DNA of 64,000 nucleotides, from the IMG/VR virus record IMGVR_UViG_3300033153_007973, positions 62,001-126,000 of that record; one strand, 5' to 3'. The notes below the pieces were generated by a model that did no database searches, was not told the origin of the DNA, and worked only from the letters and a program-made list of their open reading frames with translations. Made by a program: the position numbers and the translations under genes. This document shows positions 3,398 to 64,000 of this stretch, piece by piece (positions within the stretch are counted from its first letter, which is position 1; each line of letters begins with the position of its first letter).

Positions 3398-3484
3398 ATG
3401 AGAAACGAAGAACAGGAAATACTGAAGATCCTTGGAATTCTCATTTTGACAGGAATTCTTCTTGCAATTTTCTTCTCTTTCTGA
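3398..3484 (+). CDS. 28-aa single-TM peptide MRNEEQEILKILGILILTGILLAIFFSF
   Basis: AGGAGG SD; manual translation. Confidence 0.6.
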   Translation: MRNEEQEILKILGILILTGILLAIFFSF

Positions 3485-3499
3485 TAATATAGATTATAT

Positions 3500-3571
3500 G
3501 CGGATAAGGTGTTAATGGCTGCACGGGAGCCTTCCAAGCTTTCGGATCGGGTTCGATTCCCGATATCCGCT
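3500..3571 (+). tRNA. tRNA-Gly(TCC)
   Basis: cloverleaf; loop CTTCCAA. Confidence 0.93.
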
Positions 3572-3578
3572 CATGAAT

Positions 3579-3652
3579 GGCTGCGTAGCGTAGCGGTCTA
3601 ACGCACCGCCCTGTCAAGGCGGGGATCGACGGTTCGAATCCGTTCGTGGCCG
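3579..3652 (+). tRNA. tRNA-Asp(GTC)
   Basis: cloverleaf; loop CTGTCAA; G73. Confidence 0.95.
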
Positions 3653-49700: not shown

Positions 49701-51461
49701 AGTCAGAATGATGCTATCGGAATGTTAACTGGCCAAAAACTTCCAACAAGTCCAGATGATAGATATGACAAAATCCTTAGTGGAAAGATGGCACAGCGAA
49801 TAGCACAGAACATGTCAGCAACTAATATAAATATTAAGACTAATGAACAGGTATTTCATCCAGAGATGAACCTGTCTGGAAAAGCAGACTTAGTTGTTAA
49901 TGGTAATATCATGAAGATCAAAGCTGTCTCTAATAGAACATTCAGCAATCTAACCTCTCCTAATCCACAGCACACTTCAGAACTGAATGCACTTCTTAAT
50001 ATTTCACAGAGTAATGTCGGCTCACTCATGTATGTAAATGCTGAAACTGGAGACACAACTTCATTCAATGTATCTTCAGATCCGAATCGATTTAAACGTG
50101 ATGTAGAAACTTTAGAATCTGCAAAAGCAGTCTCTGAACATCTTATGACAAAGTATGGACCATCTATTGGTGTAGATATGGGACAAGCATATAGCAGAAT
50201 AGATCGTCTACGGATTCTGGGAGATGTCGCACCATACTCTAAGCAATTCAAAGATACACTCAAACAAGTTAAGACACTAGCACAAGTTGATAGATTAAGT
50301 CCTAGAGAACTACAAATTCTAGACGAAACTCTAGCAAGGGTTGATGAAAAGAGGGATAGATTCATATTTACAGAGAAGAGATTCAATCGCGGCAACCCAG
50401 TCACTAGTGAGGAACGACAGTATCAAGAGGGTATAAAATTGCAGTACAGTCCTTTGGAAAGAGCAGTTGGAAGCGGATGGGAAGCATTCACCCACCTCAA
50501 AAGTCCACTCCATACTAAGTTCTTAAATACATATGATCCTATCGAACAATATGAGAGAAATGAAGTCTATGGAAAACCAATTAGAATGTGGGGACAACCA
50601 TATCAGGATTTTGTCCGTCCGTATGCTACCTCTATGACGAATATCGATAGACCTATTCAAGGTGCGTTATCATTTGGAACTGGTGGCCTTATTTTTGGTG
50701 GACCGATAGGTGGTGCCATAGGTGCAGGGATAGGAACGATCTGGGGTGCATCAAATGGCGTTCGAGAAGTACCTGGATATAAACAGAAGGAACGAAGACT
50801 CATTGATACACTAGATAAAGTCCAATATGAGAAGGCCAGACGAGCATATGAACTAGATGGTGATACAGAGCAACTCAAGAAGATGAAGAATACAATGACA
50901 TGGGCATACTCAAATGCAACCACAGCAAACCAGCTTATTGCTGCCACTCCGAGACCAGAGAGAGCATTCATGGAAAGATTCATGAGAGCAGGAACGGAAG
51001 AAGAGCGAGAAAGGATTATGAGTGTTGTTCCAGATTATGTAAAACCTGTATTATCAAATGCCTGGATGGGTGGCTCTGTTGATAAGATTAAAGGAACAAA
51101 ACTCGAACGAATGCCTACCCCAGGTGAGGATTGGTCTGGATGGAAGAACGAGTTTAGAACAGAAGACATTGCAGTAAAGATGTTTAATAGAGCAGGACTC
51201 GATGCACATGATGTAGGACTTGGGTGGCAAAGTCAGATCAGGAAAATGAGCGCAACCCCCAATATTCCAGAATCATTCACAGAGGCTGTTGCTGGTGTTC
51301 CTGAAACACAATATGAACAAGTAATTAGAAGAGTAATTCCTGGAGCGACAGTCTCTGCATCAACATCAGGTGCAGGTGGCGTTAGTGTCAATCTGAGAGT
51401 AGAAGTTATAAATGAAGCAGCAATGGCAAAGAACACAGGGGTAAGAAATGCGCTATCCTAA
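43749..51461 (+). CDS. tape-measure-like protein with intein and degenerate PD-(D/E)xK domain
   Basis: 2570 aa after chaperones; glycine zippers GGPxGGxIGxxIG; internal intein. Confidence 0.75.
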   Translation: MLTRTRDRENRERLGEFSKKSRGSPIRSILKMGATMLGWGIGLKVFRGMSFKANLGLGKILASTVRKGSLTNAFVSKVSEVAKAGIRAGKYTPGQISTMKKGRGWYRKLQTTVKTSLDTMATRHLSLHDAIKTEGLAKRQYFVKSSLEKTTNRLGGMHQRYAQAKINANIPELLDDLSLKDIRFTSIVRNTKKFSGSGLGRKINEMRSTKLLEPGGDLYARARKNSGATLGGPNFGKAMAARMYRYGTDFMSYAPLFYASHRLTAVDDKKWYQPSAIADWTKWAVGTDIVFRGAMPAASIGLRKLGRGAANILENTISPTMAQKGAKFLESISKSAPIRAADLARDYTKAEIGKVGVKDVPRYTKTFFQQYRRFRGMITKDPNLHLRKGTDHLEEAMSMLSKINTRIKGSMPKHEALAQFKKETIEPPSRAMSFFNKMIRGGGLSSASRTIKPTDVGNAFNKQVTVNAGRGMISLQGQEFDVSNILPKRLMQEAGRMLGKVSIAGVRPGTWFGLKGAFRKRRPFAQLLEKDQHLGIGIGDHDGFSGSAILQKFGEQGDRLELENQIKYASVGGKGQVATLIDKGDKTSEGWAKTNTKKLYQSMIAARKEELTPTGMEKYKAALARGHNIQREGESFFLMGDKSYYSVSSGVGTKKAPVVFQTGYDVNAGQFHRWDLYAKGQGGTLSDVAMDHFGRAGTVEVDGKPIYGSSGPRLHSRMHPDKSPIANMAAKFLDKFEVGSKEERAVLGKITDLGLGRYIDSANTKVFLSDEFLFHPEFAKTTLAQDDGSAAKLIRRLDAQSHRMEKVQAQRVLKGERLITAIRGDMQGNAAGKKIESTIINRLTDDFSVVKQKAKARMTFNKANKIQLRPEMEEIIEEIASGNATSFRKLQSSVHPKLRMNKLDAYNNSAYRTWFKSEDFGVLDREMASLMDRGIITRNDKAFRALEATRIISEFDNFDVHNELINAELGKLGDYNHNTINRVIGRFQTDKASVLDIDRSIEPLWSPWGRNSRVKSSGGDFPRSGLLMSKNKDEHGDIMMSIKEELFPNSNAMEGQIQPITMKGAQSLMITNAINNVGNIVGMGFNKNTASSTKSFMQATLFKRILPAAAIASAWQTADMVADESNLFEGTSLGEGLNVFVGEQIAKTRLSIARINDITGVTDSAKYLEDLMPGAVNSGFSGALRGFGIPMLGSALGMAKGGPKGGMIGGAIGGLVSLFTAGGPLATIQQFDITKSRRELLEQYAGRAEVPIYKGQGWLFGGGSVGGIRLDRYQPNWFHRLSSQYRHSDVLYGDKFERMRASLDPFHYYEKHKYSRPYPVKEIAGVNMPLVGNVIGLGGQMASEEDLKYGNLASSVDSNTSYQSIPFGGQPSIYSNERPWGGSMMNGIGLPAGSAQPDAPRAIKPTSFPARVNAAFRMSTEFAGLRGFMTQEMITNANGGMYPYEQNPILASASSMTSPSRMFWEQEWGDMLAMSEMIRRFVPKKGQHTNEWNQMPNIMPKWMPGDDGFINFQAGDPYCVSADTPINTSTGYTLAADICEGDKIYTHNGSWLPVKKKVRRKIRKEEKSYSLKVSGVCGVDLEFSEEHPLLVKRTSKCTFSNSSICRPLRNLIKPLPDLKGFCDKVNSKKYKKGSAGTPKRGCSNSWENSEASFVPIKDCKPGDYLVYKIPASGNDESTIVSYKQLVNRYRSQYVDVDRVLHLDGGMCWVIGLYLAEGSTAKGKNVPHRLIFSMSDDEVEVLKHVKMLLLQEFSDVLREESCHIKIRDKSAELVITSYILAQIFNNLAPGNLYQKRIPQVLFDTDNDCRLALLFGMILGDGYISSKGTRIGYSTANGDLAHDFRRLAFSLGIPASYEARERVDGRTGRRNNAYECNFHSINVYGMNLADLHYKSEFVSWGYSRLPHVDNFSDGEYIYQRIAQIDEIELEYVYGFEVDDDDSFCVMDFATHNTKITRGEARLPGAGYTSMKDVAFNFPFEAEYLGFSQNDAIGMLTGQKLPTSPDDRYDKILSGKMAQRIAQNMSATNINIKTNEQVFHPEMNLSGKADLVVNGNIMKIKAVSNRTFSNLTSPNPQHTSELNALLNISQSNVGSLMYVNAETGDTTSFNVSSDPNRFKRDVETLESAKAVSEHLMTKYGPSIGVDMGQAYSRIDRLRILGDVAPYSKQFKDTLKQVKTLAQVDRLSPRELQILDETLARVDEKRDRFIFTEKRFNRGNPVTSEERQYQEGIKLQYSPLERAVGSGWEAFTHLKSPLHTKFLNTYDPIEQYERNEVYGKPIRMWGQPYQDFVRPYATSMTNIDRPIQGALSFGTGGLIFGGPIGGAIGAGIGTIWGASNGVREVPGYKQKERRLIDTLDKVQYEKARRAYELDGDTEQLKKMKNTMTWAYSNATTANQLIAATPRPERAFMERFMRAGTEEERERIMSVVPDYVKPVLSNAWMGGSVDKIKGTKLERMPTPGEDWSGWKNEFRTEDIAVKMFNRAGLDAHDVGLGWQSQIRKMSATPNIPESFTEAVAGVPETQYEQVIRRVIPGATVSASTSGAGGVSVNLRVEVINEAAMAKNTGVRNALS
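48303..49598 (+). mobile_element. intein with LAGLIDADG homing endonuclease (432 aa)
   Basis: Y/CVSADT start, SEEHPLL, IGLYLAEGS, LFGMILGDG, VYGFEV..SF..THN/T end. Confidence 0.95.
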
Positions 51462-54400
51462 TAGAATACATGCTGGCGATCATGATAATGATAGTATATT
51501 TAGTCCGATCGCTCCTCTTCTAGCAATTGGTGCTGTCAGTGCGATTGGTATGTCTGTAGCTATGATTAATCGCAATAGCATGCTTCGCTCAAAGTATTCT
51601 AGAATAGCCGCGGGGATGGATAGATATCCAACACAAGCCCTACCAAGAGTGGATAACAGTAGTGCATTCAGTGTTCTTCGTAGCGAAGCGGCCATGAATG
51701 AACTGAAAGCCATGAAGAAGCAGCGCTTAATTGATGTAGCTAGAATGGCTATTCAAAAAGAAGAAGAGGTGATCGCTAACGAGGTTAGTGATGCTCTCGG
51801 CGATCTAATGAATATCCGCTACAATCTATCTAATATAGAACTTAGAAGGGCATGGGGATCAGGCCATCCATTCGAACTAGCAGGCACTATCGCCGACACA
51901 CTCGATGAAGCCATATTAGGAATTAGTACAGGAAAACCAGATTCAATTCGAGATGCAATAACTCGCTTAAAAACAGATATAGCAACAATACAAACGCGGC
52001 CGAATACATCAGTTGAGATCAGGGCAGGAGATCTACAACAAGTTCTTGAAAGACTTCAGGGAGCTGAGAAACTATACACTGAAGATCTTCCAAAATTAGT
52101 AAACGCAGTGCAACCATTCGCTCCTGGTGCAGTTACCGCAGAAACAGCAGCAACTATCTTGGGCGGCTCACCAGCTACTTTAGCGAAAAGACTAAATGAA
52201 GAACAAATTCCCGGTGGAAAGAAAGGAAGAGTTAATCGGGAACGAATGGAACAAATAAAGATACTGACTGGATTCAAGACAGAGAAGATCAATAATAGAT
52301 TAGTTACCACACATGGACGAGTAAACTGGGTGCGAAAACTAAGGGGAATCAGTCCAACAACTGGGGCAATCATGCCCGCTGGTTCCACAATTAAAGTCAT
52401 ATATCCTCAAATTGGAGTTACTGGTAATATCGAAGATCTTGATAGAGTAGTTCAGGCTGCTGGAAAAGAATTCAGGACTCATCCATTACTGAAAGAAGCA
52501 CACAAGACACATCTCAGAATGGCTAAAAATGCAAAGGGAAATGTTAAGTTACTATTATCATCTCCAGATATGAAAACGTCACTTAAGAGATTTACAGATG
52601 GAGTAGTGGAACATCTTGGAGTAAACCCTAGAGATATTACTTTTACTCAAGAAGGAGCCAATGTTGTTTCCCTTGTTAAGTTCACTGACGCACCACCGAT
52701 GCGATTTGTCTTCCCATATGAAGAAGCAGGTCTATCAGCATCATATGGACATAATGTAATCTCAGCTTCCAAGAAATCTTTCACACATATGGGCAAAGGT
52801 GAAAAGAAGATACTGTCATCCAGCATCACTAATGGTTTTATTGATAGAATGGTTGGAAAAGGCACCGGTTCCAATGGTGTGTTCCAGAAGATGGCTACTG
52901 CAGGTGATATAAAGAATGGAGCATTCAAGGACGCAACATCAAGAGTTCTTTTCCAACGAAAAGTTAAAGGAATATTCTCTGGTGGTGGTAAAATGATGAC
53001 AGACGTAACAAATGCTTCCCCAGAGGCAATATCAAATGCAGTAACAACTTTTGAAGAGCTTCCAGGAACAGACAAAATTAGTGTATTACAAATAATGAAA
53101 CATGAAGAGGAAACTAAACTCAGTACTATTATATCTAATCCAACTGGTAATAGATTTGTAGGTCAGAAAACTGCGGTCCTCGATAAGATAAATAGTCTTC
53201 AACGACAAATCAATAAACTCCAAAAAGGATATAGTGCAGACAAAGCACTTACCGATCTTGAGCGAACCCACACTGGAAAACTCAAAGTTGCAGAAGTGAT
53301 TAACTATAATAATAATAATATCATTATTAGTGAATTAAGTAAAGACGGATTTATACCTACAACTTCTGTCGTAACGCCAGAACGAGCACTAAAGAATAAA
53401 GCGTGGGGATTGGAAGACATTAGAGAAAGATACAGTGATCCTGGATTGCAATGGATCAAAGGATCTAAATCTATAAATAATATGTATGTTTCTTCTGATG
53501 TATCAATATTTAGTCCCAGTAGCAGTGATTGGGGCAGAAGAATATCAAATTTAAAGAAGAGATCAAAACACAGACTAAAATTAACCATCGGTAAGAAAGA
53601 GGTTAATTTTAGTGGTGTTAGAATGATTAGTAGAGCAGAACAGGTTAAACGAGCAGCACTTGCAGGAGATTATAGCACAGCTCGTGGATCATATGGACAA
53701 GTTAATGTATTATTTGTTGACTCCATAGGAGGAGATGCTGGAGAACTCAGAATCACAGATGAAGTCGGTGACATGTTAGCTGGCTCAAGAGATAGAAAGG
53801 TTTCACTTAATTCTGCAGACATTAGACGGCCATTTAGTGGCATTGATCAGCAAATGACTAAAGCATTAAAGAAAGTATCTAAAGAGAATGGATTAATTGA
53901 TCTAACTGCTCCAGAGAATTGGCACGTTAGAAAGAAGCTTAATGTATTTCTTCCAAAGATAAAAGATCAAATCAAAACTCCTTACGAGGATATAAAGCTA
54001 ACTGCAATAACACATAAAGCAACGGGCAGTTATGAATTTCATTATACTGCGAATATGACAGCTGCGACGAAATCAAAGATTCTGCTTGGTGCGAACAATG
54101 AAAGATTACAAGTACATTCTACATTATCCAAAGATAGAATGTTTGAAATGCTTGCTGCTGAAATGGACTGGGATTTATCAGATGCTAATAGCTCTAAGAC
54201 TCAGTTCCTCAGAGACATAGGAGCAACAGTGGGTGCAAAAGCACCACTCAGTCTCTTCAAGAAGGGAATTGCAACACCAGGAGCAGCAGCCGGATTAGGA
54301 ATGAGCATAACAAATGCGCTAGTTTTTAGAACACTCTATAGAGTTCAAAAGATTCTGGCAGATCGTGGTCTTAGAACCATGGATGATAAACAAGCAACAA

Positions 54401-57400
54401 AGATCGTACAAGGTCTTTTGAAGATAATTGACAATCAAGGAGAACTTGGGCGAAATGTCAAATTTTCAGTTGATGATCTTCTTGGTGGAGCAACACTATT
54501 AACACACATGGGTAATAAAAGCACTAGTGATACAGCAACTCTTATAGGTAGGACTCTCAATATTAATACTATCAAAGATCCTGACACTTATAAAAAGATG
54601 ACTAAAGGTCTGGCAAAAGTGATCGAACAATTTGGACATGAGAATAAGTCGAAGAGTGCAAACACAGCAAGTGAGATTATGGATTCTATTGTAAAATTTA
54701 GAGATGGAGAGATCAGAATATTTGGTCTCTCACAGATGTATCATACTGCACCAGACATTGATGAAACTTTCAAGATGAGCTCTGGAAAGTTTGGGCCCGC
54801 GGGAGTTGGTGGTGATCCAGCTGGGACAATAACATCAATGACAGAAGTAATAGCAGCAAAATTGAGCGGGTTCAATTCACTTGCAGACAAAGCACAATTA
54901 CAAATGGCAATGGGAATGGAATACACAAAAGATTACTTTGCCATATATGCAGGTCTTCTTGAGCCTTCATTAATGGAAGAACGTCTGGCTCAGTTTGGAA
55001 CTGATAGATTCAAAAGTAAGAATCCTGGAAAACAAGAAGTACTAACTATAGATAAGCTCATGAGTATGGCAAAGAGAGATAAAGATGGAAAGAAGAACAG
55101 ATTCTTCGATCTGTTCAAAACCAGATACGGAGTCAATACAGAAGCATTTCAGGAAGCAGTTGGTGAAGGTGGTATTCTATTCGGGAAACAGAAGATTGAG
55201 ATGGCAGAAGCCATGAGTAATATACAAAGACTCGTAAATGAAAACATGAAGGAAGTGGATCTCGAAAAGTTCTCTGGTAATGTAAAGAAACAAATACAAG
55301 AGATCATGTCACTGTCTCCGCTTATTTCGTCAAAACAAGCACAATTATATCACGAAATAACTCGAGATTATAAGTTCCTTGAACTAAGTAAGAAACACCC
55401 ACTGAAAATACTGGGAGTTAATAGATCAATGTCAAGAGTTCCTATGGTTGGATTCTTTGATATTCCTACACGTGATATTCCAGATAACCTTATGGATGTC
55501 TTTGCAAATAGAGATCTATATGCTATAAACCAAAAGATTATAGAAGGTACAAATGTAGATATTGGAAAACAAGTCATAGGGAAAACAGGCGCAAAGATAG
55601 GAAAGGATATTTCAAAGAGTTCAAAGGTGCTTGTTCAAAATGCTCCACATCGCGCATTGTTAAATCTTATGACTGCGGTATCTGTGGGTGCAGATGAAGA
55701 AGTCATCGGAACATTCGCAGATAGATACACAACAGCCATACAACAATACTCACAGGCAGTAGGAAGAACTACAATTAGTCCTAGAGTTGGTGGGTCTTTA
55801 CAGACACGGCCATTACAATCTGAGGGAAAATTTAACCTCGCTATTATGAATACCAAAGCAGCAAAATATAGTCTTATGAATGCTGAGAAAGTAAAGAATA
55901 TGCCTGGTGCACTTTCTGGTACTCGGATATGGCAACCAGATCTAGGTGAGATTTGGATGGATAAGAGCACTTTTATTAATGTAATGAAGAGTGAGATGAG
56001 CGGTGATCATAGATCAATGAACAAGGCAACACAGATGGCTGATGAAATCATGGCCGAATCTAGAATATTTACGAGATTCTATAATAGAAAACCAACACTA
56101 GGACAAGACATAAGAGCACTCCGTGTCAGACTTTTTGATGCTGAGATGCTTACAGATCAAAGATTTGCTGGAAAGGTTGCATCAGGTGAGATAGCAAGAT
56201 TAAAGAAATCAATGATCCTTTCCGTGATTGATCAAAATCTTGCATCAGGTGACTTTGATGGTGATACTGGTGCAATGGTCATGGCTATGTTCAAAGGTAA
56301 GATGTCTGATAATGCAGATGTACTAGCGGATTGGGTAGTTGGTAATAGTTTCAGATATCAGACAAGCGATGGAAATATCAAAGTATTCGAGAATAGTGGC
56401 AGAACTGGTAGAGCATATATGGAGACATTCCAAGAAGTAATAGAAACATCTGCTCATAAATCAGACAATAAAAGATTATCTAATCAATTATCAAAGACAA
56501 CAGTAACAATTGAACAACAGATAGAACACGTTGCAGGAATGGTTCCAGATTCTGCAGAACGCGGACAGTTCTATACAAAAGTAAGAGATCTAGCAAAAAA
56601 GCAATATGGAGATGATCTATCACAGGCTGTAACATTTCGCACTGGAATAGGAGATATCAGATTTTGGAATAACTCAACAAGCATTCCTAGAAATCTTATA
56701 CGCGCTAAAAGAGCAGCAGAAGCAAAGATGACAGAACGAGCAACGGGCATCAATACTGCAGATATTATCGAAGAAGGAATTGAAGCAACTGAACAATTCC
56801 TTGGTGATCACGGTATGGTCTATGACCATAAAGGCATAGCACAAGAACTAAAAGCTACACATGCTGGGACAGGTGGAGGGAAAATAGCACATGCAGCATT
56901 AGCAAACATGAAAGATCAAATAGATTATTATGGTCCTTCACGGCTCATGTTAAAAGCCGGAACAGGACCCGTATATAACTTTATGCACAACCATTTATGG
57001 AACGCAGCAATTAATACCTTTGGTATTACTTCTCAACAATCAAAGGATCTTGTTAAGTGGGGAAGAGTTCCACAGCAAGCAAATATCTCTATGAAACATA
57101 TGCTTCCTGGAATTGCCGGCGATGCTGTTAATAATCTAAAGACATTCTGGACTGCTATACCAGGAAGTTCAGCACACAGAAACTCTGGATTGAAACTAAA
57201 GACAGGCAACTATGATTTTACACTTACAAAGTTTTGGGGAAATCAAGTAAAGAGAACACAACAGATAGCTAAGAAGCTTGGTGATGATAGTCTTGATGAT
57301 ATGCTAGAGAAGGTCACATCATTTGGTACAAATCCCATCGTCAAAGATGATGGAGTAATCAATCTAGGTGACTTTATACGACTTCAGGATCGAAGACTTA

Positions 57401-58272
57401 AATATATGGAACGAGGTCTTCTCGCTAAAGTATCAGATGAAGGAATAGCTGCAACACAAAAGAGTAAGTCTGTATCTGAAAAGCTCATGAACGAGTTAGC
57501 TACAGAAGATCGAGTATATAATGAGATAGAGGAATCTGGAGCTTTCTTCAGAAGTGTTGCTGGTAGTGAATCCGCAACATCTCATATCATGAATAAGAAG
57601 ATCTTTGAAGGTGGTAATCAGAGAATACATAGATCTTTTCGTGCATTATTTAGTGGAGAAAACATTGGAAAACATGTCGATGATGATATATTAAGAGGAA
57701 CACTGGGGCAAGTAGCACAGAAAATAGCACCAGCAAAGATAAAGCCGCTATTCACTCGTCCTAATGTTGCTAAATATGCAGCAGATTCAATCTCTCGAAA
57801 AGCAGCTAGACTGATTGAAGGTACTTCTCTACGGAAACATATAGATACTAAAGGAATGAAAGCCGCGGGAATGGGAATGACTTTGCTCGGCACTGCTGCA
57901 GTTGGTTTCTTGGCATTTGCTGCTGCATCCCCTGGCGGACAACCTTGGCTAGGACCAAAACCTGGATATGGTGGAGAATACAACGAACGCAGACGTCGCA
58001 AAGATGAAGAGCACATGGAGAATATCACCACCACTGGAAGATCCAAGCTCAAATTTCTAGATGGGAACTCATATCCAGATTACACACCATCCAAAACTGC
58101 TAGAATCTATATAGATCCACAGAAGAAGAGATATGCAACTGTATCACAAACCTTACGTTCTGTCCAAAATCTTGGTAATGCAGGAATCATGGACTTTAAT
58201 AAGCGACAGATGGTATCTGGTGGAACAACAATCAATAATATGTCAAGGCCGAATGGATATGGAGGATTCTAA
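51448..58272 (+). CDS. putative single-chain two-barrel (virion) RNA polymerase
   Basis: PRVGGS, NRKPTL (aa 1546), GDFDGD (DFDGD aa 1602-1606) in beta-prime order; beta-like GQVNVLF..DAGELRITDE upstream. Confidence 0.75.
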   Translation: MRYPNRIHAGDHDNDSIFSPIAPLLAIGAVSAIGMSVAMINRNSMLRSKYSRIAAGMDRYPTQALPRVDNSSAFSVLRSEAAMNELKAMKKQRLIDVARMAIQKEEEVIANEVSDALGDLMNIRYNLSNIELRRAWGSGHPFELAGTIADTLDEAILGISTGKPDSIRDAITRLKTDIATIQTRPNTSVEIRAGDLQQVLERLQGAEKLYTEDLPKLVNAVQPFAPGAVTAETAATILGGSPATLAKRLNEEQIPGGKKGRVNRERMEQIKILTGFKTEKINNRLVTTHGRVNWVRKLRGISPTTGAIMPAGSTIKVIYPQIGVTGNIEDLDRVVQAAGKEFRTHPLLKEAHKTHLRMAKNAKGNVKLLLSSPDMKTSLKRFTDGVVEHLGVNPRDITFTQEGANVVSLVKFTDAPPMRFVFPYEEAGLSASYGHNVISASKKSFTHMGKGEKKILSSSITNGFIDRMVGKGTGSNGVFQKMATAGDIKNGAFKDATSRVLFQRKVKGIFSGGGKMMTDVTNASPEAISNAVTTFEELPGTDKISVLQIMKHEEETKLSTIISNPTGNRFVGQKTAVLDKINSLQRQINKLQKGYSADKALTDLERTHTGKLKVAEVINYNNNNIIISELSKDGFIPTTSVVTPERALKNKAWGLEDIRERYSDPGLQWIKGSKSINNMYVSSDVSIFSPSSSDWGRRISNLKKRSKHRLKLTIGKKEVNFSGVRMISRAEQVKRAALAGDYSTARGSYGQVNVLFVDSIGGDAGELRITDEVGDMLAGSRDRKVSLNSADIRRPFSGIDQQMTKALKKVSKENGLIDLTAPENWHVRKKLNVFLPKIKDQIKTPYEDIKLTAITHKATGSYEFHYTANMTAATKSKILLGANNERLQVHSTLSKDRMFEMLAAEMDWDLSDANSSKTQFLRDIGATVGAKAPLSLFKKGIATPGAAAGLGMSITNALVFRTLYRVQKILADRGLRTMDDKQATKIVQGLLKIIDNQGELGRNVKFSVDDLLGGATLLTHMGNKSTSDTATLIGRTLNINTIKDPDTYKKMTKGLAKVIEQFGHENKSKSANTASEIMDSIVKFRDGEIRIFGLSQMYHTAPDIDETFKMSSGKFGPAGVGGDPAGTITSMTEVIAAKLSGFNSLADKAQLQMAMGMEYTKDYFAIYAGLLEPSLMEERLAQFGTDRFKSKNPGKQEVLTIDKLMSMAKRDKDGKKNRFFDLFKTRYGVNTEAFQEAVGEGGILFGKQKIEMAEAMSNIQRLVNENMKEVDLEKFSGNVKKQIQEIMSLSPLISSKQAQLYHEITRDYKFLELSKKHPLKILGVNRSMSRVPMVGFFDIPTRDIPDNLMDVFANRDLYAINQKIIEGTNVDIGKQVIGKTGAKIGKDISKSSKVLVQNAPHRALLNLMTAVSVGADEEVIGTFADRYTTAIQQYSQAVGRTTISPRVGGSLQTRPLQSEGKFNLAIMNTKAAKYSLMNAEKVKNMPGALSGTRIWQPDLGEIWMDKSTFINVMKSEMSGDHRSMNKATQMADEIMAESRIFTRFYNRKPTLGQDIRALRVRLFDAEMLTDQRFAGKVASGEIARLKKSMILSVIDQNLASGDFDGDTGAMVMAMFKGKMSDNADVLADWVVGNSFRYQTSDGNIKVFENSGRTGRAYMETFQEVIETSAHKSDNKRLSNQLSKTTVTIEQQIEHVAGMVPDSAERGQFYTKVRDLAKKQYGDDLSQAVTFRTGIGDIRFWNNSTSIPRNLIRAKRAAEAKMTERATGINTADIIEEGIEATEQFLGDHGMVYDHKGIAQELKATHAGTGGGKIAHAALANMKDQIDYYGPSRLMLKAGTGPVYNFMHNHLWNAAINTFGITSQQSKDLVKWGRVPQQANISMKHMLPGIAGDAVNNLKTFWTAIPGSSAHRNSGLKLKTGNYDFTLTKFWGNQVKRTQQIAKKLGDDSLDDMLEKVTSFGTNPIVKDDGVINLGDFIRLQDRRLKYMERGLLAKVSDEGIAATQKSKSVSEKLMNELATEDRVYNEIEESGAFFRSVAGSESATSHIMNKKIFEGGNQRIHRSFRALFSGENIGKHVDDDILRGTLGQVAQKIAPAKIKPLFTRPNVAKYAADSISRKAARLIEGTSLRKHIDTKGMKAAGMGMTLLGTAAVGFLAFAAASPGGQPWLGPKPGYGGEYNERRRRKDEEHMENITTTGRSKLKFLDGNSYPDYTPSKTARIYIDPQKKRYATVSQTLRSVQNLGNAGIMDFNKRQMVSGGTTINNMSRPNGYGGF

Positions 58273-58469
58273 TGGGTGCTACAATCACAGTGAATGTCAC
58301 GATAAAGAACCAGGATCCAAACGAGATCGCAGCCAGGATCAGAAGTGCCCTTGAAAGCGTAACTTCAGAGCCAGTAACGATTAACATAACAGCGAGTGAA
58401 CAACAGGTTGACAATAATGCTATCTCAGTGTACAATAGAGAAAAACAGGAGAGAGGGCAACCACGCTAG
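58272..58469 (+). CDS. 65-aa beta-alpha-beta protein
   Basis: GGAGG SD; TAATG coupling. Confidence 0.7.
   Translation: MGATITVNVTIKNQDPNEIAARIRSALESVTSEPVTINITASEQQVDNNAISVYNREKQERGQPR
58408..58436 (+). promoter_or_regulatory. intragenic sigma70-type promoter
   Basis: TTGACA-17-TACAAT upstream of ATG 58484. Confidence 0.7.
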
Positions 58470-58483: not shown

Positions 58484-61400
58484 ATGGCTATATCTGCTAT
58501 ATCCTATTCTTCATTTTCTGTCCACGAGCTGTGTAAATACCAGTTCTGGTATCAGTATTATGCACAGCTTGCTGGTGATACTGGATCCAAGGCAACTGCC
58601 ATTGGTAACGTTACTCACACAGAAGCTGAAGACATGCTTCAGGAGCTGACGAATGTCCTTCCAGACAACACAGAGATAGGCTTCACAGAGATACAGAGAC
58701 AAGAAGTCGTACAAAGATATCAGGCTATTGTGTCATCCGGTCTAAAATCACTCCAGAGCCGATACGATATAACTCCAGCAGATATACAGAGAGCACTGGA
58801 TGGACTGGATAGACTTTCAAAGAGAACATATCTAGTTGGTGTACCAAATGACCAAGGTGTATATGATAAAATCAGATGGCAAGTAATAGACAAGGAAAAG
58901 CGATTTGATAAGACAATCAGTTCTCCAGATGGCGAATATAAACTGACTGGATCTATTGACTTAATCTTGAAGCGTCTCTTGGATGCCGGTGGTAATCCTA
59001 TTGCATCACATGTCCACCAGTTTATGGATCTTAAGTCTGGAAAGAAACAGTTTGGCCCAATCAGCTGGAAATCAGAACAGGTTATGGTTTATGATATCGC
59101 ACTTGGTGACCTATATAAGGTAGACGGCATAGCACCAACTCTCCGATATGACTTCTTCCTCTTACCAGATGATCCGAATCCCCACTATACCACTGTTGTT
59201 CCAGTTGGAAACGAAGTAAGACCAGCAGATTATCTTGCTAGAAGAGACAAGGTAAATAGCAGACTTTCTGCAGCATATAAATTCTTAACAGATGGAATTC
59301 CGAACGATTCAAATGATCCAACTGTTATCATAACTGAACCCAATGATTGGTGTACCAGATGTCCGGCATATCAACATTGTCCTAATAAAGAAAATGCAAA
59401 TCTCAGAAAAGCCCCAGCTGGCGGCCTCCGCGGAGGACCATATCCTGAACTCAGAACGCTCACAGAAAAGACAGGAGCATTTGCGAAGTCTGAACTAAGC
59501 GACGAAACACTCACTGAAATAATTGAACAGATTATAAATCATGGTGGTACAGTACGTGAAGCAATCGGCCACATGAAATCAGATGAAAGAGAATTATGGA
59601 CAACAAAATATACTAAATTCATGCAGGATCATTTATCTAACAAGACAAACGATATTATTGCTGATAATAAAAGGATCAAAGAAACAATACTTCAAATTGG
59701 TGCAGTTCACATAACCGCACCAATTACTAACATCAGTCTAACAGATAGAAAAGAAGTCGTTACCGCAGACACACTACGAACAAAAGAATCATTGACGCTA
59801 AGGAAACAGACATCAAATAGAGAAGCAAATCTCACTATTATCTTTTCTGGTAAAGACCAGATCAACTATGAACTACGTCATATCTTAGCACAGTACCAGG
59901 CTTTTCCATTTACTCAGATCAGGAACAAAGAAATCACAAGGATGCTAATCCCGCTCCAGTCACATCTACCAACATACTTTGCAGTCGATCAGACTCTTCT
60001 CAGAAAGGTACTCACAGACAACAACATAAAAGACTTCTCCACACAAAAAGGAGAAGCACACAGAAAAGACCTTAAAGCAGCTAGAGATGAAGTCTATTCT
60101 AAAGTTAAATTCATGTATGCAATCCGATCAATATCAATCGCACCAGTGCCATCTCTGGTTGATACTATTGAACTCAACTTAAGGATCCAGGTCATGGACT
60201 TGGATCCTGTAAGCGAAACTGGCAGAATCAGATTTCTATATGACACACAATCCGCACTGGAACAGCTTGGTTGGTTCACGCATTTCTGCCGACTAAATGA
60301 ATATCGTAAGAATGATACAAATGGATCTAAAACCATTGTTGATACAATTATACCAAAAGAAAAAGCAATAACGATATCATTCAAGAATGCAACAAACCAT
60401 AGAAAAATTGATCTAGGTAAATATTCAGTATTAGCTATGCCTTTATATATTGGAAGAGAAGATAATACATATTTCGTAAATCCAGGAGACGATGAGTTTA
60501 TTGATAAAGATGCGTACATCTTATTGGTTAGAACTCCTAATCGAGACACAACAACAACAACGTATACTTATCTAGCATTCTTGTATACCAGAGGATTATT
60601 ACTACCGATACGAGAATCAGATACATATCTTGATAAAGGGAAGATCAAGTTACCAGATGAACGATTAGTGGGACCTATAGATTCTCTAAAAACTGCTGAT
60701 CTTTCATATGTGTTCTGTACGGATCTATCAGTATATACTGAATCTGCATATAGCAGACGCGAATTAACAGAAGCATTTAAACTGTCGTGGAATAAACTTA
60801 CAGCGGCAAATTTTAATATAGCGCAAATAAATGCACGTAATGGAGTCCTTTCTCCTAGCACATCTGATCCACGACGTGCACCCGCATGGTTGAATGCATC
60901 AAAGAGATGGAAGAATTTCAATACTAACGGTGATATCTGGCCAATCATTAACCCTACTAATGTTATTGACCCATTCCTGACAATGATTGAAATCAGAAAC
61001 CAATCAAGTAACATAGTATCAGGCATCAGTGCAGAGATAAATGATTTGCCATGGGTAAGCGAACACAGAAACATGCAAAGCAGAGGTGTCTTTGGTGAAT
61101 GGATGTATACTTCACCTGTGATGCCAGCGCGTGTATCATCTGAAAACAGCACAGGAACAAAAGATGCAACAGTAACTATTACAGGGGTGGATAAATCAAC
61201 AATACCATTATTAGTAATCCAAAGGATATTCAGAAAACTATTCCTTAATTCTGAAGTATTGTTTACAACAAATCTTGGTGCTCTTATTAAGAGAAACTTA
61301 CCAAAGACATCTGCAGACCCAAAGCCATTTATTAAAGATCTTCAGAAATCATTTGAGGCTCGGTTCCAAAATGCATACGATAATGGATTTTATGCATCAG

Positions 61401-64000
61401 GACAGACCGAAGCTTATATCAGATTCTTAACTATTGATGCAATAGATAGAAGTAATATGCATCCGATCAACAAGACACAGGAAATTACTGTTAGTGACAG
61501 AAAGGGAACAATATTAACTAAACATAATATAGCATTTACTTCTGATAATCCTAATACAATGGATATAAAGTCTGGGAAACCAAAGGCTGAAATTGATACT
61601 AATACATTTATAGTAATGCCGCCAATCATTAATAAGAAGTACGCACAAATACTTATTAGCGAATATCATCGATATTCTGCAACTACTGAAGTTGCATATA
61701 GATTAGCATACAAAAGATTAGGTTCGGATGCTGATGCAACCAAAATTATATCAGAAGTGCAGAAGATTAAAAGTGCGCTATTACCATCGAATACACTATA
61801 TAGAGTACACAATACATTCTGTAAAAGAATGTCAGAGAAAGGTATTGGTTTTATTAATTATAGGAATGCTGTAGAAGAAATGCTATATGACAGTAGCATA
61901 ATAACCCCCAGTGCTGTTACATATACACCAAATCCTAATTCCACAAATGGAATGCTTGTTAGACTTGACCATGCAGCAGCAAACAATCTTCTAGATAAAA
62001 TAGTAGGATACGAAGGTCAAGATATCACATATTATGAGAAGATACTAAATGGCGGTACTCCGATTTTACGAGATGATATAGAATCATCCGAGGTCACTAG
62101 AGATATAAAAGTTATGTCAGGTGGTGGTTCCAATCCTGCACAAAGAGGATTGACAGTTGATAGTCTATCGCTCTCCAGACCATTCATTAAATATTATACT
62201 TCTCTTCTCGCAGAGTATGTCGATCCAGATAAGTATCTTGATATACTCGAGAGAGTTCCAAGTTACTTATATCACAAACCATATGAACAACACGTAGAAT
62301 TCCCATTACTACAGCCATATATCAAATCAGGCGAAGAAGGAAGAAGGAACAACATCAAAATCTTCTTCCGTAGTCTCAGATCGAGCACATTTGCAGCAAC
62401 TCAAGAAGATAAACTTAGCCGTGCTGCTTTTAGAACTATTAATGATATCGTCTTAAATGGAATACGAGAGATAATCTCAGGTTTCATGCCAGGAACCAGT
62501 GCAGAATATAGGCAATTTATTAATAGCGTTGCAAATGATCCAGAGACATCCAAATTATATAATCCAACAAATTGTGCAGACTGTTACTGTCCACACAATG
62601 CGGATATCAAAGCATACATAGATAGGCAATTAAGTGCTAAAATCAATAAGATGGCGGAAGATCTTGGAAATACTATTCCAACAGATAGTTCGATAACAGC
62701 ATCATCAACTGGCGCAGCCGATGGAATAGCAGCAAAAGAACTAATAATAAGTATAGTAAAGCAACTGAAGAAATATCCTGAACTCGTGACTGTGCATCAA
62801 CCACCAACAGAAGCTTCATATAATAGAATCGTTCGTGCTGTGCATAAACAAGGAACGATTAATCCAAATGACGGAGCAGTTGACCAAAGAAATCCAAGCC
62901 GCAGCCCTAGATTTCAGAGCTATTTGTACATAGGTACATATATAGCTGGTCTTCTTTACCTTCTCATGTGGAGAATGAAAAGATTTGCAGAACAGGATAG
63001 AGATAAGAATATAGTAAATGATGATGTTAGACGAAAAATAAGCATCACAATGAAATTAATAGATACTATTTTGAACAATTCAAGTTCAACTCAAGATAGG
63101 TTGACGCAGGAAATTCGTGGGATATTCAGTGGTATTGTAACAGATTATAAGAAAGATCAGAGTGCAAAAGAGAAGAGCAAATTCCAAAACTTAAATGTTG
63201 ATATAGAAACAACACAAGCAGAAAACAGTGTGTTAGAACTATCAAATCTATTTAATCATTATGGAAGAGCAATTGTAAAGTTAAAGACCATGCCAACATT
63301 CATAATTAAACGCAATGTTGATGGTAATATTATAAATCAAAGACAAGTACTAACTGATAGAGCAATATTAGATAGTGTACCAGAAGGCGATGTCTATCAC
63401 ACTATTATTACAAGTGATATTTTTGAAACACCAAATTTCAGGATATCAAGTGAAGTATCTATTTTGAAGGATGCACTGCTAAGTAGTGTTCTCACCTTAT
63501 TTGATAGTTTCATACCGGATCTCTTCTTTTGGAAAGAAATTAATATCGAGAATTCCAAAGACAGAGAGACTAATGTGACTACGATTACGAACTTCAAAAT
63601 AGCACAAGAGAATAATATTGTACCAGTATATATGGAGGGACATGAATATCCATTCCCACAGTGTCTTGGAGGAAGTTCGACCCAACTAACTATTGACTTC
63701 ATCACAGATGATATGTTCTTGGTAGAAAACATTGCAGAAGCAGCAACTGAACTCAATATCATGATGAAGAAATATAACCTGATCAAGAATGTCAATCCAC
63801 TTCGAAGACCAGCTGGTACTGAAGAATCCAGTTCCAGACATAAACAACTTAATAATCTACTTACTAGAGATCGACACAGAAGACACCTCGTAAATAAGCT
63901 CAATACTGCTATCAATGGTAAAGAACCTCAAATTAGCAAGAGCGGTCTTGATACTCCAATGCTTATCCAGAACAATATCGCAAATATGGTAGGTCTATAT
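58484..64000 (+). CDS. Cas4/AddB-like Fe-S PD-(D/E)xK nuclease fused to giant baseplate-like protein (partial, at least 1839 aa)
   Basis: manual translation: SYSS....LCKYQF, IGNVTH, EKRF, GSIDL, DLKSG, QVMVY, WCTRCPAYQHC; frame spot-checked as open to window end, which explains its absence from the ORF track. Confidence 0.8.
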   Translation, partial: MAISAISYSSFSVHELCKYQFWYQYYAQLAGDTGSKATAIGNVTHTEAEDMLQELTNVLPDNTEIGFTEIQRQEVVQRYQAIVSSGLKSLQSRYDITPADIQRALDGLDRLSKRTYLVGVPNDQGVYDKIRWQVIDKEKRFDKTISSPDGEYKLTGSIDLILKRLLDAGGNPIASHVHQFMDLKSGKKQFGPISWKSEQVMVYDIALGDLYKVDGIAPTLRYDFFLLPDDPNPHYTTVVPVGNEVRPADYLARRDKVNSRLSAAYKFLTDGIPNDSNDPTVIITEPNDWCTRCPAYQHCPNKENANLRKAPAGGLRGGPYPELRTLTEKTGAFAKSELSDETLTEIIEQIINHGGTVREAIGHMKSDERELWTTKYTKFMQDHLSNKTNDIIADNKRIKETILQIGAVHITAPITNISLTDRKEVVTADTLRTKESLTLRKQTSNREANLTIIFSGKDQINYELRHILAQYQAFPFTQIRNKEITRMLIPLQSHLPTYFAVDQTLLRKVLTDNNIKDFSTQKGEAHRKDLKAARDEVYSKVKFMYAIRSISIAPVPSLVDTIELNLRIQVMDLDPVSETGRIRFLYDTQSALEQLGWFTHFCRLNEYRKNDTNGSKTIVDTIIPKEKAITISFKNATNHRKIDLGKYSVLAMPLYIGREDNTYFVNPGDDEFIDKDAYILLVRTPNRDTTTTTYTYLAFLYTRGLLLPIRESDTYLDKGKIKLPDERLVGPIDSLKTADLSYVFCTDLSVYTESAYSRRELTEAFKLSWNKLTAANFNIAQINARNGVLSPSTSDPRRAPAWLNASKRWKNFNTNGDIWPIINPTNVIDPFLTMIEIRNQSSNIVSGISAEINDLPWVSEHRNMQSRGVFGEWMYTSPVMPARVSSENSTGTKDATVTITGVDKSTIPLLVIQRIFRKLFLNSEVLFTTNLGALIKRNLPKTSADPKPFIKDLQKSFEARFQNAYDNGFYASGQTEAYIRFLTIDAIDRSNMHPINKTQEITVSDRKGTILTKHNIAFTSDNPNTMDIKSGKPKAEIDTNTFIVMPPIINKKYAQILISEYHRYSATTEVAYRLAYKRLGSDADATKIISEVQKIKSALLPSNTLYRVHNTFCKRMSEKGIGFINYRNAVEEMLYDSSIITPSAVTYTPNPNSTNGMLVRLDHAAANNLLDKIVGYEGQDITYYEKILNGGTPILRDDIESSEVTRDIKVMSGGGSNPAQRGLTVDSLSLSRPFIKYYTSLLAEYVDPDKYLDILERVPSYLYHKPYEQHVEFPLLQPYIKSGEEGRRNNIKIFFRSLRSSTFAATQEDKLSRAAFRTINDIVLNGIREIISGFMPGTSAEYRQFINSVANDPETSKLYNPTNCADCYCPHNADIKAYIDRQLSAKINKMAEDLGNTIPTDSSITASSTGAADGIAAKELIISIVKQLKKYPELVTVHQPPTEASYNRIVRAVHKQGTINPNDGAVDQRNPSRSPRFQSYLYIGTYIAGLLYLLMWRMKRFAEQDRDKNIVNDDVRRKISITMKLIDTILNNSSSTQDRLTQEIRGIFSGIVTDYKKDQSAKEKSKFQNLNVDIETTQAENSVLELSNLFNHYGRAIVKLKTMPTFIIKRNVDGNIINQRQVLTDRAILDSVPEGDVYHTIITSDIFETPNFRISSEVSILKDALLSSVLTLFDSFIPDLFFWKEINIENSKDRETNVTTITNFKIAQENNIVPVYMEGHEYPFPQCLGGSSTQLTIDFITDDMFLVENIAEAATELNIMMKKYNLIKNVNPLRRPAGTEESSSRHKQLNNLLTRDRHRRHLVNKLNTAINGKEPQISKSGLDTPMLIQNNIANMVGLY

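What the first reader, a model, noticed from the sequence alone, without database searches (positions are those of the whole stretch)
58484..59390. Intact Cas4/AddB-type Fe-S nuclease as the N-terminus of a giant baseplate-like protein
Seen (not in the ORF track): Cys17 plus CTRC-x5-C staple, G.xxH, E, GSID, DLK and QxxxY all present. It is followed by LQIGAVHI..TLRTKES..LRHILAQYQAFPF and, near 63620, VPVYMEG...PQCLGG, which I read as tail/baseplate-type segments; a CxxCxCxH motif occurs near 62575. Established: the 1+3 Cys arrangement binds a 4Fe-4S cluster in Cas4/AddB. Inference: a structural protein delivering or displaying an active nuclease.
Basis: partly seen in the sequence, partly recalled or inferred. 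Interest (0 to 1): 0.75.

Follow-up and report, generated by a model that had tools for sequence, protein, structure and literature searches.

The report
Iron-sulfur nuclease fused to phage tail hub
A 234-kb jumbo phage carries a complete RecB/Cas4-type iron-sulfur nuclease as the first 300 residues of its 3,795-residue tail baseplate hub protein, a rare new version of the known habit of such hubs of carrying an enzyme to the point of cell entry.

Summary
The ORF starting at 58484 is real and runs 3,795 aa, ending 7.9 kb beyond the window. Residues 6-300 match Pfam PDDEXK_1 end to end (E 2e-11).

The rest of the protein belongs to the gp147 "baseplate hub" family of Bacillus phage 0305phi8-36 (phrog_20474, E 8e-38; four colinear blocks). 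It sits between a tape-measure-position gene and a Baseplate_J gene.

The fusion is not an assembly artefact. A 4,342-aa ortholog on an unrelated metagenome contig has the same synteny and also begins with a PDDEXK_1 domain that keeps all the motifs.

The idea is not wholly new. Hardies et al. (2007) described swappable enzyme domains on this hub, including a staphylococcal-nuclease domain, and I found SNase, SLT and peptidase domains in relatives. An iron-sulfur Cas4-like head occurs in only 2 of about 55 family members I examined.

The function is inferred: a virion-borne nuclease, three copies per tail, acting on DNA ends where the genome enters. Both structure predictions failed, and the link to the T4 gp27 / P2 gpD fold could not be confirmed here. 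I rate it a new variant of a known kind, of moderate interest.

The parts
58484..64000 (+). First 1,838 codons of a 3,795-aa ORF. It continues to G000:C1:131871 (= L002:11871). It is a gp147-family giant baseplate hub protein.
   Evidence: Open frame. phrog_20474 E 8e-38 in 4 colinear stretches. BLAST blocks A-D against 0305phi8-36 gp147, KLEB27-3 gp035 and WH1 gp094.
58484..59390 (+). N-terminal RecB/AddB/Cas4-type PD-(D/E)XK nuclease domain (aa 1-302).
   Evidence: PF12705 full-length match, E 2.3e-11. phrog_69 at 7e-15. ESM-Atlas neighbours are all PDDEXK_1/Cas4 phage proteins.
58532..58534 (+). Cys17, the single N-terminal ligand of the predicted 4Fe-4S 'iron staple'.
   Evidence: Direct reading.
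58604..58630 (+). Motif I region, GNVTHTEAE (G41, H45, E47).
   Evidence: Direct reading. P0007 has GTSFHE at the same relative place.
58946..58966 (+). Motif II, TGSIDLI (catalytic Asp159).
   Evidence: Direct reading. P0007 has FGTLDVF.
59024..59041 (+). Motif III, MDLKSG (Asp182-x-Lys184).
   Evidence: Direct reading. P0007 has QDYKT.
59078..59092 (+). QxxxY motif (Gln199, Tyr203).
   Evidence: Direct reading. P0007 has QLPLY.
59351..59380 (+). C290-x2-C293-x5-C299, the three C-terminal Fe-S ligands.
   Evidence: Direct reading. It aligns with a CxxCx5C of P0007 at aa 698-707. P0007's own nuclease domain has another at aa 271-280.
59381..59674 (+). Gly/Pro-rich then helical linker (aa 300-397) between the nuclease and the hub body.
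   Evidence: Conserved with P0007. No family match.
59675..60343 (+). Hub family block A (aa 398-620; 'LQIGAVH...TLRTK...LRHILAQ..PF..IRN').
   Evidence: Alignment A1 with P0007, WH1, KLEB27-3 and gp147 has 15 invariant columns. Identity to P0007 is 47%.
62573..62596 (+). CADCYCPH (CxxCxCxH) motif, not conserved.
   Evidence: Present. Absent from all six aligned relatives.
63554..63808 (+). Hub family block B (aa 1691-1775; 'VPVYMEGHEYPFPQCLGG').
   Evidence: Conserved in all 7 aligned members. BLAST to gp147 aa 500-571.
51448..58272 (+). 2,274-aa gene in the tape-measure position directly upstream.
   Evidence: Same position as 0305phi8-36 gp146. Homologous to the 2,334-aa gene upstream of P0007.
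58272..58469 (+). 65-aa ORF between the tape-measure-position gene and the hub, conserved in position.
   Evidence: A 66-aa counterpart lies at L010:7009-7209.

Best explanation
The gene encodes the central baseplate hub of a 0305phi8-36-lineage jumbo myophage. Its first ~300 residues are a complete, probably active RecB/AddB/Cas4-type PD-(D/E)XK nuclease, held together by a 4Fe-4S cluster (C17 + C290/C293/C299).

Shown:
- the domain, its motifs, the continuous frame and the hub-family body;
- the tail-module context;
- retention of the fusion in a divergent ortholog;
- relatives that carry other enzymes (SLT, SNase, peptidases) on the same scaffold.

Inferred:
- The nuclease is built into the virion. 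A trimeric hub (from general knowledge of T4 gp27-type hubs) would give three copies at the tail tip, and it would be brought to the cell envelope or cytoplasm when the tail fires, as T4 gp5 lysozyme is.
- With only three tethered copies, and an enzyme class that needs free DNA ends, it most likely acts locally and stoichiometrically on linear DNA ends at the entry site. My favoured substrate is the leading end of the phage's own genome, by 5' resection or trimming that prepares it for annealing, circularisation or recombination-primed replication. Less likely substrates are the ends of competing or host DNA.
- A separate stand-alone Cas4-like gene elsewhere in the genome presumably serves ordinary replication and recombination.
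For: Domain identity:
- PF12705 matches full length at E 2e-11; phrog_69; ESM-Atlas score 0.97.
- All catalytic motifs are present, and the 1+3 Cys are the only Cys in 600 aa.

Hub identity:
- phrog_20474 at 8e-38.
- Colinear blocks A-D with gp147, WH1 gp094 and KLEB27-3 gp035.
- gp147 was assigned to the T4 gp27 / P2 gpD hub family by HMMs (PMC2147016).
- ESM-Atlas neighbours of aa 2791-3795 are all Mu gpP/gp44-type hub clusters, but at score 0.88 this is a lead only.
- Context: sheath upstream, gp145-like and tape-measure-position genes directly upstream, Baseplate_J (PF04865, 2.3e-7) downstream.

The fusion is real and selected:
- A second contig is identical.
- Ortholog P0007 has the same synteny and a PF12705 head (2e-19) with every motif kept, although the two heads are no longer alignable while the bodies are 31-47% identical.
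- Composition of the head (GC 0.416, GC3 0.33) matches the rest of the gene and the genome.

Enzymes recur on this scaffold:
- SLT on gp147.
- SNase on WH1 (PF00565, 1.4e-5) and on its homolog KLEB27-3.
- An M15-like motif on L014.
- SLT inside 10 of 47 further hub ORFs, and SNase inside 1.

A second, stand-alone Cas4 (PF01930, 4e-6) exists at G000:216626-217642.
Against: - There is no direct evidence that this protein, or its first 300 residues, is in the virion. In 0305phi8-36, the GenBank note for gp147 lacks the 'identified by mass spectrometry' remark that its neighbours carry.
- The gp27/gpD fold could not be confirmed here. Pfam PF05954, PF21683, PF22255, PF04965 and PF04717 gave no hit in the genome. 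hhalign against P2 gpD and Mu gp44 gave only E 0.04-0.21. Both AlphaFold models were unusable, with pLDDT 34-35.
- The Cas4-like head is rare: 0 of 47 further family members have it. It is therefore dispensable for hub function.
- An exonuclease placed next to the phage's own incoming DNA is a risk.
- A 4Fe-4S cluster may not survive in an extracellular particle in oxic water.
- The true genome ends are unknown. The 'DTR' is a 114-bp overlap.
- The substrate is pure inference.
Confidence: 0.55

Rival explanations
1. Injected weapon. The hub-borne nuclease enters the cell and destroys host, plasmid, prophage or co-infecting phage DNA, for host takeover or competitor exclusion, in the way that T6SS spike-linked nuclease effectors work.
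For: It has the same architecture as the favoured reading. Polyvalent phage proteins delivered with the DNA are proposed to carry DNases with such roles (PMC5512222). From my own knowledge, T6SS VgrG/PAAR proteins deliver nuclease toxins from the homologous spike-hub position. SNase heads occur in relatives.
Against: Iron-staple RecB-family domains act from DNA ends or on ssDNA, which is a poor tool against a circular chromosome. Three copies per virion are few for bulk degradation. No peptidase or release domain was detected in the protein. The SNase heads of WH1 and KLEB27-3 have Gln where, by my eye and from memory of the SNase consensus, a Ca-ligand Asp normally stands (unverified).
Confidence: 0.2
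2. Non-catalytic role. The domain is a DNA-end-binding plug or clamp that holds or shields the leading genome end in the tail (like Mu gpN or T4 gp2), or simply a structural module stabilised by the Fe-S staple.
For: It sits at the tube-proximal end of the hub family scaffold, just before block A. P0007 carries an apparently degenerate SNase-like segment and an orphan second CxxCx5C behind its nuclease, which suggests that heads can decay into structural pieces.
Against: All catalytic motifs (D, D-x-K, QxxxY, H/E) survive in both orthologs even though the rest of the domain has diverged beyond pairwise recognition. That pattern is the signature of selection on catalysis.
Confidence: 0.1
3. Extracellular role. 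The nuclease clears extracellular or biofilm DNA so that the baseplate can reach the cell surface.
For: The other enzymes on this scaffold (SLT, M15-like, NlpC/P60, M23) act outside the cytoplasm. SNase, found in relatives, is the classical secreted nuclease.
Against: A hub is buried in the centre of the baseplate until the tail fires, so it cannot clear a path beforehand. Fe-S nucleases are typically intracellular enzymes.
Confidence: 0.08
4. Artefact. Two genes (a recombination exonuclease and a hub) were joined by an assembly or sequencing error, or the giant ORF is not a virion protein at all.
For: No sequencing run could be listed to check reads. The head resembles stand-alone 300-340-aa phage exonucleases.
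Against: An identical junction is present in a second contig. The fusion is conserved in P0007 from a different metagenome. The linker and block A are conserved in frame. The body belongs to a family annotated as virion or baseplate protein in three cultured phages.
Confidence: 0.04

Closest known systems
Bacillus phage 0305phi8-36 gp147 baseplate hub and its BtI1 prophage homologue (Hardies et al. 2007, PMC2147016)
   Same: Same family (phrog_20474; blocks A-D colinear). Same position after the tape-measure gene and before the gpJ-like gene. The same principle applies: a conserved assembly core with swappable enzymatic end domains. The BtI1 version was already noted to carry an N-terminal staphylococcal nuclease domain.
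   Different: gp147 is 1,903 aa, with an N-terminal SLT and C-terminal NlpC/P60 + M23. Ours is twice as long, has no detectable peptidoglycan hydrolase, and carries an Fe-S PD-(D/E)XK nuclease instead.
Bacillus phages vB_BceM_WH1 gp094 and vB_BauM_KLEB27-3 gp035 (virion/baseplate proteins, ~2,320 aa)
   Same: Same hub family. They have an N-terminal head of about 390-400 aa before block A, and the head is a nuclease-fold domain (PF00565 SNase, 1.4e-5 in WH1).
   Different: The nuclease superfamily is unrelated (OB-fold SNase, Ca-dependent, no Fe-S). There is no sequence similarity between these heads and ours.
Stand-alone phage PDDEXK_1 / Cas4-like exonucleases (phrog_69) and the AddB/Cas4 'iron-staple' nuclease class
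   Same: Same Pfam family, size (~300 aa), catalytic motifs and 1+3 Cys pattern.
   Different: Those are free cytoplasmic replication, recombination or CRISPR-adaptation enzymes. Related phages of this lineage encode them as separate 288-409-aa ORFs, and this phage has one too. Here the domain is the N-terminus of a tail protein. PF01930 (Cas_Cas4) itself does not match.
T4 gp27-gp5 hub/spike with tail lysozyme; T6SS VgrG/PAAR with effector domains (own knowledge)
   Same: An enzyme is carried on the central hub/spike of a contractile tail and released at the target envelope. T6SS versions include nucleases.
   Different: In T4 the enzyme is a lysozyme on a separate spike protein. T6SS is a bacterial weapon. 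Membership of our protein in the gp27/gpD fold was not confirmed here.
Polyvalent proteins of phages and conjugative elements (Iyer et al. 2017, PMC5512222)
   Same: A giant, late-gene-encoded, probably virion-borne polypeptide that combines an enzymatic effector with other modules.
   Different: No LPD, MuF, ArdC, methylase or processing-peptidase domains were detected (only LPD3 at E 0.1). The body is a structural hub rather than a string of effectors. Cas4, SNase and tape-measure are not mentioned in that paper.

Membership tests
RecB/AddB/Cas4-type PD-(D/E)XK nuclease (Pfam PF12705 PDDEXK_1) | Profile match above the curated threshold over the whole domain | tested here: met
   44.6 bits against a cut-off of 22, E 2.3e-11, profile positions 2-247 of 247. 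Confirmed in a six-frame search of the genome.
RecB/AddB/Cas4-type PD-(D/E)XK nuclease (Pfam PF12705 PDDEXK_1) | Catalytic motifs II (D), III (D/E-x-K) and QxxxY in the right order and spacing | tested here: met
   D159, D182-L-K184 and Q199-x3-Y203 read directly. The same set is present in ortholog P0007. Column-by-column alignment to the profile could not be displayed.
RecB/AddB/Cas4-type PD-(D/E)XK nuclease (Pfam PF12705 PDDEXK_1) | One N-terminal Cys plus C-x2-C-x5-C at the C-terminus (iron staple) | tested here: met
   C17, C290, C293 and C299 are the only Cys in aa 1-600.
RecB/AddB/Cas4-type PD-(D/E)XK nuclease (Pfam PF12705 PDDEXK_1) | Bound 4Fe-4S cluster and metal-dependent nuclease activity | not testable with these tools
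   The complex-prediction job with 4Fe-4S was not folded. The AlphaFold single-sequence model had pLDDT 34.
CRISPR-associated Cas4 (Pfam PF01930) | Match to the Cas_Cas4 profile | tested here: not met
   No PF01930 hit at E <= 1 for aa 1-329. The phage's separate 338-aa ORF does match, at 4e-6.
0305phi8-36 gp147-type giant baseplate hub (phrog_20474) | Profile match and colinear conserved blocks | tested here: met
   phrog_20474 at E 7.9e-38 in 4 stretches. Blocks A-D are colinear with gp147, WH1 gp094 and KLEB27-3 gp035. 47 further members were found with block C.
0305phi8-36 gp147-type giant baseplate hub (phrog_20474) | Position between the tape-measure gene and the baseplate wedge (gpJ-like) genes | tested here: met
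   gp145-like and tape-measure-position genes lie upstream. Baseplate_J PF04865 (2.3e-7) and phrog_6 lie two genes downstream.
0305phi8-36 gp147-type giant baseplate hub (phrog_20474) | Presence in the virion | not testable with these tools
   Only depositor annotations are available: WH1 gp094 'virion structural protein' and KLEB27-3 gp035 'putative baseplate protein'.
T4 gp27 / P2 gpD / Mu gp44 hub fold | Profile or fold match to gpD/gp44/gp27 domains | tested here: inconclusive
   PF05954, PF21683 and PF22255 gave no hit. hhalign gave E 0.21, 0.04 and 0.11, at the places expected for the first domain and the last strand. ESM-Atlas neighbours are all GpP/Gp44-like, at score 0.88, which is a lead only. 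A published HMM link exists for gp147. The AlphaFold model was unusable.
Polyvalent proteins (Iyer et al. 2017) | Several effector domains with LPD/MuF-type modules and a processing peptidase | tested here: not met
   Only LPD3 at E 0.1, below threshold. No other effector or peptidase domain appeared in 3,795 aa.

The most novel reading that the evidence does not exclude
This would be the first iron-sulfur enzyme built into a phage tail. A hub-tethered Cas4/AddB-type exonuclease would meet the phage genome's leading end as it leaves the tube and resect or trim it (or ambush competing linear DNA). Genome-end processing would then be done by a pre-loaded virion component before any phage gene is expressed. 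The tandem arrangement in the ortholog (a nuclease, an SNase-like segment and an orphan Cys staple in front of the hub body) further suggests that new heads are stacked in front of old ones, an arms-race style of N-terminal accretion.
Probability: 0.3. Interest if true: 0.75.

Novelty: new variant of a known kind. Interest (0 to 1): 0.55.

Why it matters
Tail hubs and spikes are known to carry cell-wall hydrolases. Nucleases at that position have been noticed (SNase, 2007) but never explained or tested. An intact Fe-S, end-dependent nuclease kept at the N-terminus of the hub in two divergent jumbo phages gives a sharper handle on what a tail-tip nuclease is for, because its enzymology (free ends, 5'-3' polarity, a spectroscopically visible cluster) is easy to assay. 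If it acts on the incoming genome, it would add a new step to the phage entry pathway. If it attacks other DNA, it would be a phage counterpart of T6SS nuclease effectors. It also shows how large structural proteins of uncultured jumbo phages recruit stand-alone replication enzymes as modules.

Tried and rejected
- AlphaFold2 of aa 1-340 without an alignment gave pLDDT 34. AlphaFold2 of the block C-D region with a 5-sequence alignment gave pLDDT 35. Both were too poor for fold searches, so none were run.
- Complex prediction with a 4Fe-4S ligand was not folded.
- phmmer of the head against 1.8 billion representatives found only its own fragment, plus five weak multi-stretch hits to a 35-residue piece that I regard as spurious.
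- phmmer against PDB sequences found nothing.
- A word-based search for giant proteins sharing the head found only self.
- Pairwise BLAST and phmmer between our head, P0007's head and the phage's stand-alone Cas4 found no significant similarity. MAFFT could not align them in register, so no head profile was built.
- Hub-fold tests gave nothing significant: Pfam PF05954, PF04965, PF04717, PF21683 and PF22255 in the genome; a Pfam scan of seven family members; hhalign with 7- and 41-sequence family alignments against P2 gpD / Mu gp44; and a profile of the hub-family block C-D alignment (A4) against PDB sequences.
- For read support, no sequencing run was listed.
- A recent foreign origin of the head is rejected, because its GC and GC3 match the gene and genome.
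- The CxxCxCxH motif as a functional site is rejected as unconserved.
- Literature searches for a Cas4-like or PD-(D/E)XK nuclease on a tail or hub found no report.
- A weak PF12705 hit in a 2,582-aa frame of a relative (G002) lies two genes upstream of the hub, not in it.
Full report
CONTEXT. The window is bases 62001-126000 of a 234,008-bp virus record. Its ends overlap by only 114 bp, most likely a sign of a circular assembly rather than true terminal repeats. The + strand carries a classical myophage late module: large terminase (18654-20444), portal (22782-24452), a protease-like gene, major head protein (27710-29005) and tail sheath (32452-34893). A run of giant genes follows, of 1,491, 2,570 and 2,274 aa. 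The terminase is closest to Moorella phage MTATph1, the Bacillus 0305phi8-36 group and Acinetobacter phage ME3. The phage therefore belongs to the deep 0305phi8-36-like jumbo lineage.

THE OBSERVATION.
- The ATG at 58484 follows an in-frame TAA by one codon. It opens a frame that runs off the window and ends at G000:131871, giving 3,795 aa.
- Residues 6-300 match Pfam PDDEXK_1 (PF12705) over profile positions 2-247 of 247, E 2.3e-11, twice the gathering score. They also match PHROG 69 'exonuclease' at 7e-15.
- A protein-language-model search returns only stand-alone phage PDDEXK_1/Cas4 clusters of 300-340 aa, score 0.97.
- These four cysteines are the only ones in the first 600 residues of a protein with 0.4% Cys. 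The 1+3 'iron staple' arrangement of AddB/Cas4-type nucleases (established knowledge) is therefore not a chance pattern.
- PF01930 (Cas_Cas4) itself does not match. 'RecB/AddB/Cas4-type' is the right class, but 'Cas4' is not the right family.

THE REST OF THE PROTEIN.
- The body matches PHROG 20474 (a 1,954-position profile labelled 'endolysin') in four colinear stretches, E 8e-38.
- tblastn finds aa 2796-2972 in Bacillus jumbo phages: 0305phi8-36 ORF147 'baseplate hub protein', KLEB27-3 gp035 'putative baseplate protein', WH1 gp094 'virion structural protein', and Edson.
- Pairwise BLAST defines four colinear blocks: A (aa 398-620), B (1695-1766), C (2796-3103) and D (3402-3636). Long, lower-GC variable stretches separate them.
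- Synteny agrees. The 2,570-aa gene is homologous to 0305phi8-36 gp145 (a virion protein). The 2,274-aa gene sits where the tape-measure gp146 sits. A Baseplate_J gene (PF04865 2.3e-7; phrog_6 2e-19) lies two genes downstream.
- Hardies et al. assigned gp147 to the T4 gp27 / P2 gpD hub family with HMMs and described 'extensive remodelling' of its N- and C-terminal enzymatic domains (PMC2147016).

I could not reproduce that fold link directly. Pfam hub, spike and gp25 profiles find nothing in this genome. hhalign of 7- and 41-member family alignments against P2 gpD plus Mu gp44 gives only E 0.04-0.21, though at the places expected. The ESM-Atlas neighbours of aa 2791-3795 are all Mu gpP/gp44-like hub clusters, at a score (0.88) that is only a lead. 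The AlphaFold model of this region was useless, with pLDDT 35. Membership in the gp147 family is therefore shown. Membership in the gp27/gpD fold rests on the literature and remains inconclusive here.

IS THE FUSION REAL?
- A second IMG/VR contig carries residues 129-3795 at 100% identity.
- More tellingly, a search with blocks C-D found P0007, a 4,342-aa protein on a 27-kb contig of another metagenome, 39% identical there and 47% in block A. Its neighbours mirror ours: a 2,334-aa gene, a 66-aa ORF, the giant, then 315-, 362-, 378- and 668-aa genes homologous to ours.
- P0007 begins with a PF12705 domain (aa 7-281, E 2e-19) with C15, GTSFHE, FGTLD, D-Y-K, QLPLY and CxxCx5C.
- The two heads have diverged so far that BLAST and phmmer no longer pair them, yet every catalytic and cluster-binding residue is kept. 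That is the pattern expected if catalysis is under selection.
- The head's base composition matches the gene and genome, so it is not a recent import.
- No sequencing run could be listed for a read-level check.

AN ODDITY IN THE ORTHOLOG. Behind its nuclease, P0007 has a segment with a sub-threshold SNase match (E 0.019) whose metal and catalytic positions look substituted (by eye). It then has a second CxxCx5C at aa 698-707. It is this second triad, not the first, that aligns with ours and continues into the shared linker and block A. One reading is that a newer head was added in front of the decayed remnant of an older one. I could not test this.

HOW COMMON IS IT? A block-C pattern search brought in 47 further viral loci and one MAG contig with complete hub homologues of 1,391-3,014 aa.
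- None has a CxxCx5C anywhere, none matches either head by phmmer, and none has a PF12705 hit inside the hub ORF.
- The PF12705 genes of those phages are ordinary stand-alone ORFs of 288-409 aa.
- Our phage has such a gene as well: a 338-aa Cas4-family ORF at G000:216626-217642 (PF01930 4e-6), plus a weaker 276-aa candidate.
- Enzymes on the scaffold are nevertheless a family habit:
  - an SLT head and NlpC/P60 + M23 tail on gp147;
  - an SNase head on WH1 (PF00565 1.4e-5) and its homologue KLEB27-3;
  - an M15-like metallopeptidase motif on L014 and a few others (by eye or regex only);
  - SLT inside 10 of the 47 hub ORFs, at N-terminal, internal or C-terminal sites;
  - SNase inside one of them.
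- In about half of the members block A starts within the first 90 residues, so they have no head at all.

The Cas4-like head is thus a rare variant (2 of about 55) of a known modular theme. The presence of a nuclease at this position was already remarked on, without explanation, in 2007.

MECHANISM (inferred). A hub is a trimer at the tip of the tail tube (established for T4 gp27-type hubs). A hub-borne enzyme is therefore present in three tethered copies and works locally when the tail fires, as T4 gp5 lysozyme and the SLT or peptidase domains of relatives do on peptidoglycan. Iron-staple RecB-family domains need free DNA ends or ssDNA (established for AddB and Cas4). Three such molecules are badly suited to destroying a circular chromosome, but they are sufficient to process a DNA end. 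The DNA end reliably present at the tail tip is the leading end of the phage's own genome.

My favoured reading is therefore pre-loaded end processing: 5' resection or trimming ahead of annealing, circularisation or recombination-primed replication. The separate stand-alone Cas4-like gene would serve later replication. The main rival is an injected weapon against competing linear DNA or host DNA, analogous to T6SS spike-linked nucleases and to the DNases proposed for polyvalent proteins (PMC5512222). A non-catalytic end-clamp (Mu gpN / T4 gp2-like) and extracellular DNA clearing are less likely, for the reasons given under rivals. None of these can be decided from sequence.

WHAT FAILED. Both structure predictions, the Fe-S complex prediction, read mapping, PDB sequence searches and all direct hub-fold tests failed or were inconclusive. 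Literature searches found no report of a PD-(D/E)XK/Cas4-like nuclease on a tail hub, but the searchable library is incomplete.

VERDICT. The function is plausible but untested. This is a new variant of a known kind (an enzyme-decorated baseplate hub), of moderate interest because the enzyme is unusual for a virion and readily testable.

Noticed in passing
window 43749-51461 (intein about 48303-49598): The 2,570-aa homologue of 0305phi8-36 virion protein gp145 is interrupted by a 432-aa intein (Cys1519 ... His-Asn1950 | Thr1951). The intein has a LAGLIDADG homing endonuclease (PF14528, 4.7e-10; Hint PF13403 weak). The flanks on both sides align to gp145.
   Followed up: partly
G000:C1:216626-217642 (-) and 187689-188519 (-), outside the window (L008, L007): The phage has two further Cas4-like ORFs. 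One is 338 aa with PF01930 at 4e-6 and a C...CxxCx5C pattern. The other is 276 aa with only the C-terminal Cys-rich part weakly matching PF12705. Neither is a close paralogue of the hub head.
   Followed up: partly
P0007 aa 290-710 (L010:8066-9328): Between its nuclease head and block A, the ortholog has a sub-threshold SNase-like segment (E 0.019) with substituted catalytic positions. It also has a second CxxCx5C (aa 698-707) that aligns with the triad of our protein. This may be the remnant of an older head, and it is unexplained.
   Followed up: partly
window 58272-58469: A 65-aa ORF lies between the tape-measure-position gene and the hub. A 66-aa counterpart with a similar N-terminus sits at the same place in the P0007 contig (L010:7009-7209). 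Its function is unknown.
   Followed up: partly
related viral records G018, G020, G027, G029, G031, G033-G036 (coordinates): In nine related phages a strong SNase domain (E 1e-12 to 6e-21) sits in a different large ORF of 908-1,462 aa, mostly tens of kilobases from the hub gene; in G029 it lies only about 1.5 kb upstream of the hub ORF. Large nuclease-bearing proteins seem to recur in this lineage.
   Followed up: no
G000 ends (bases 1-114 and 233895-234008): The 'direct terminal repeat' of the record is an exact 114-bp overlap. That is more likely an assembly signature of circularity than the physical genome ends.
   Followed up: partly
L018 (CAYVGZ010000001.1, 196,613-bp contig): A contig filed under a Bathyarchaeia MAG encodes a 2,479-aa hub homologue (33% identity in block C). 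It is probably a jumbo-phage contig binned with the archaeon.
   Followed up: no
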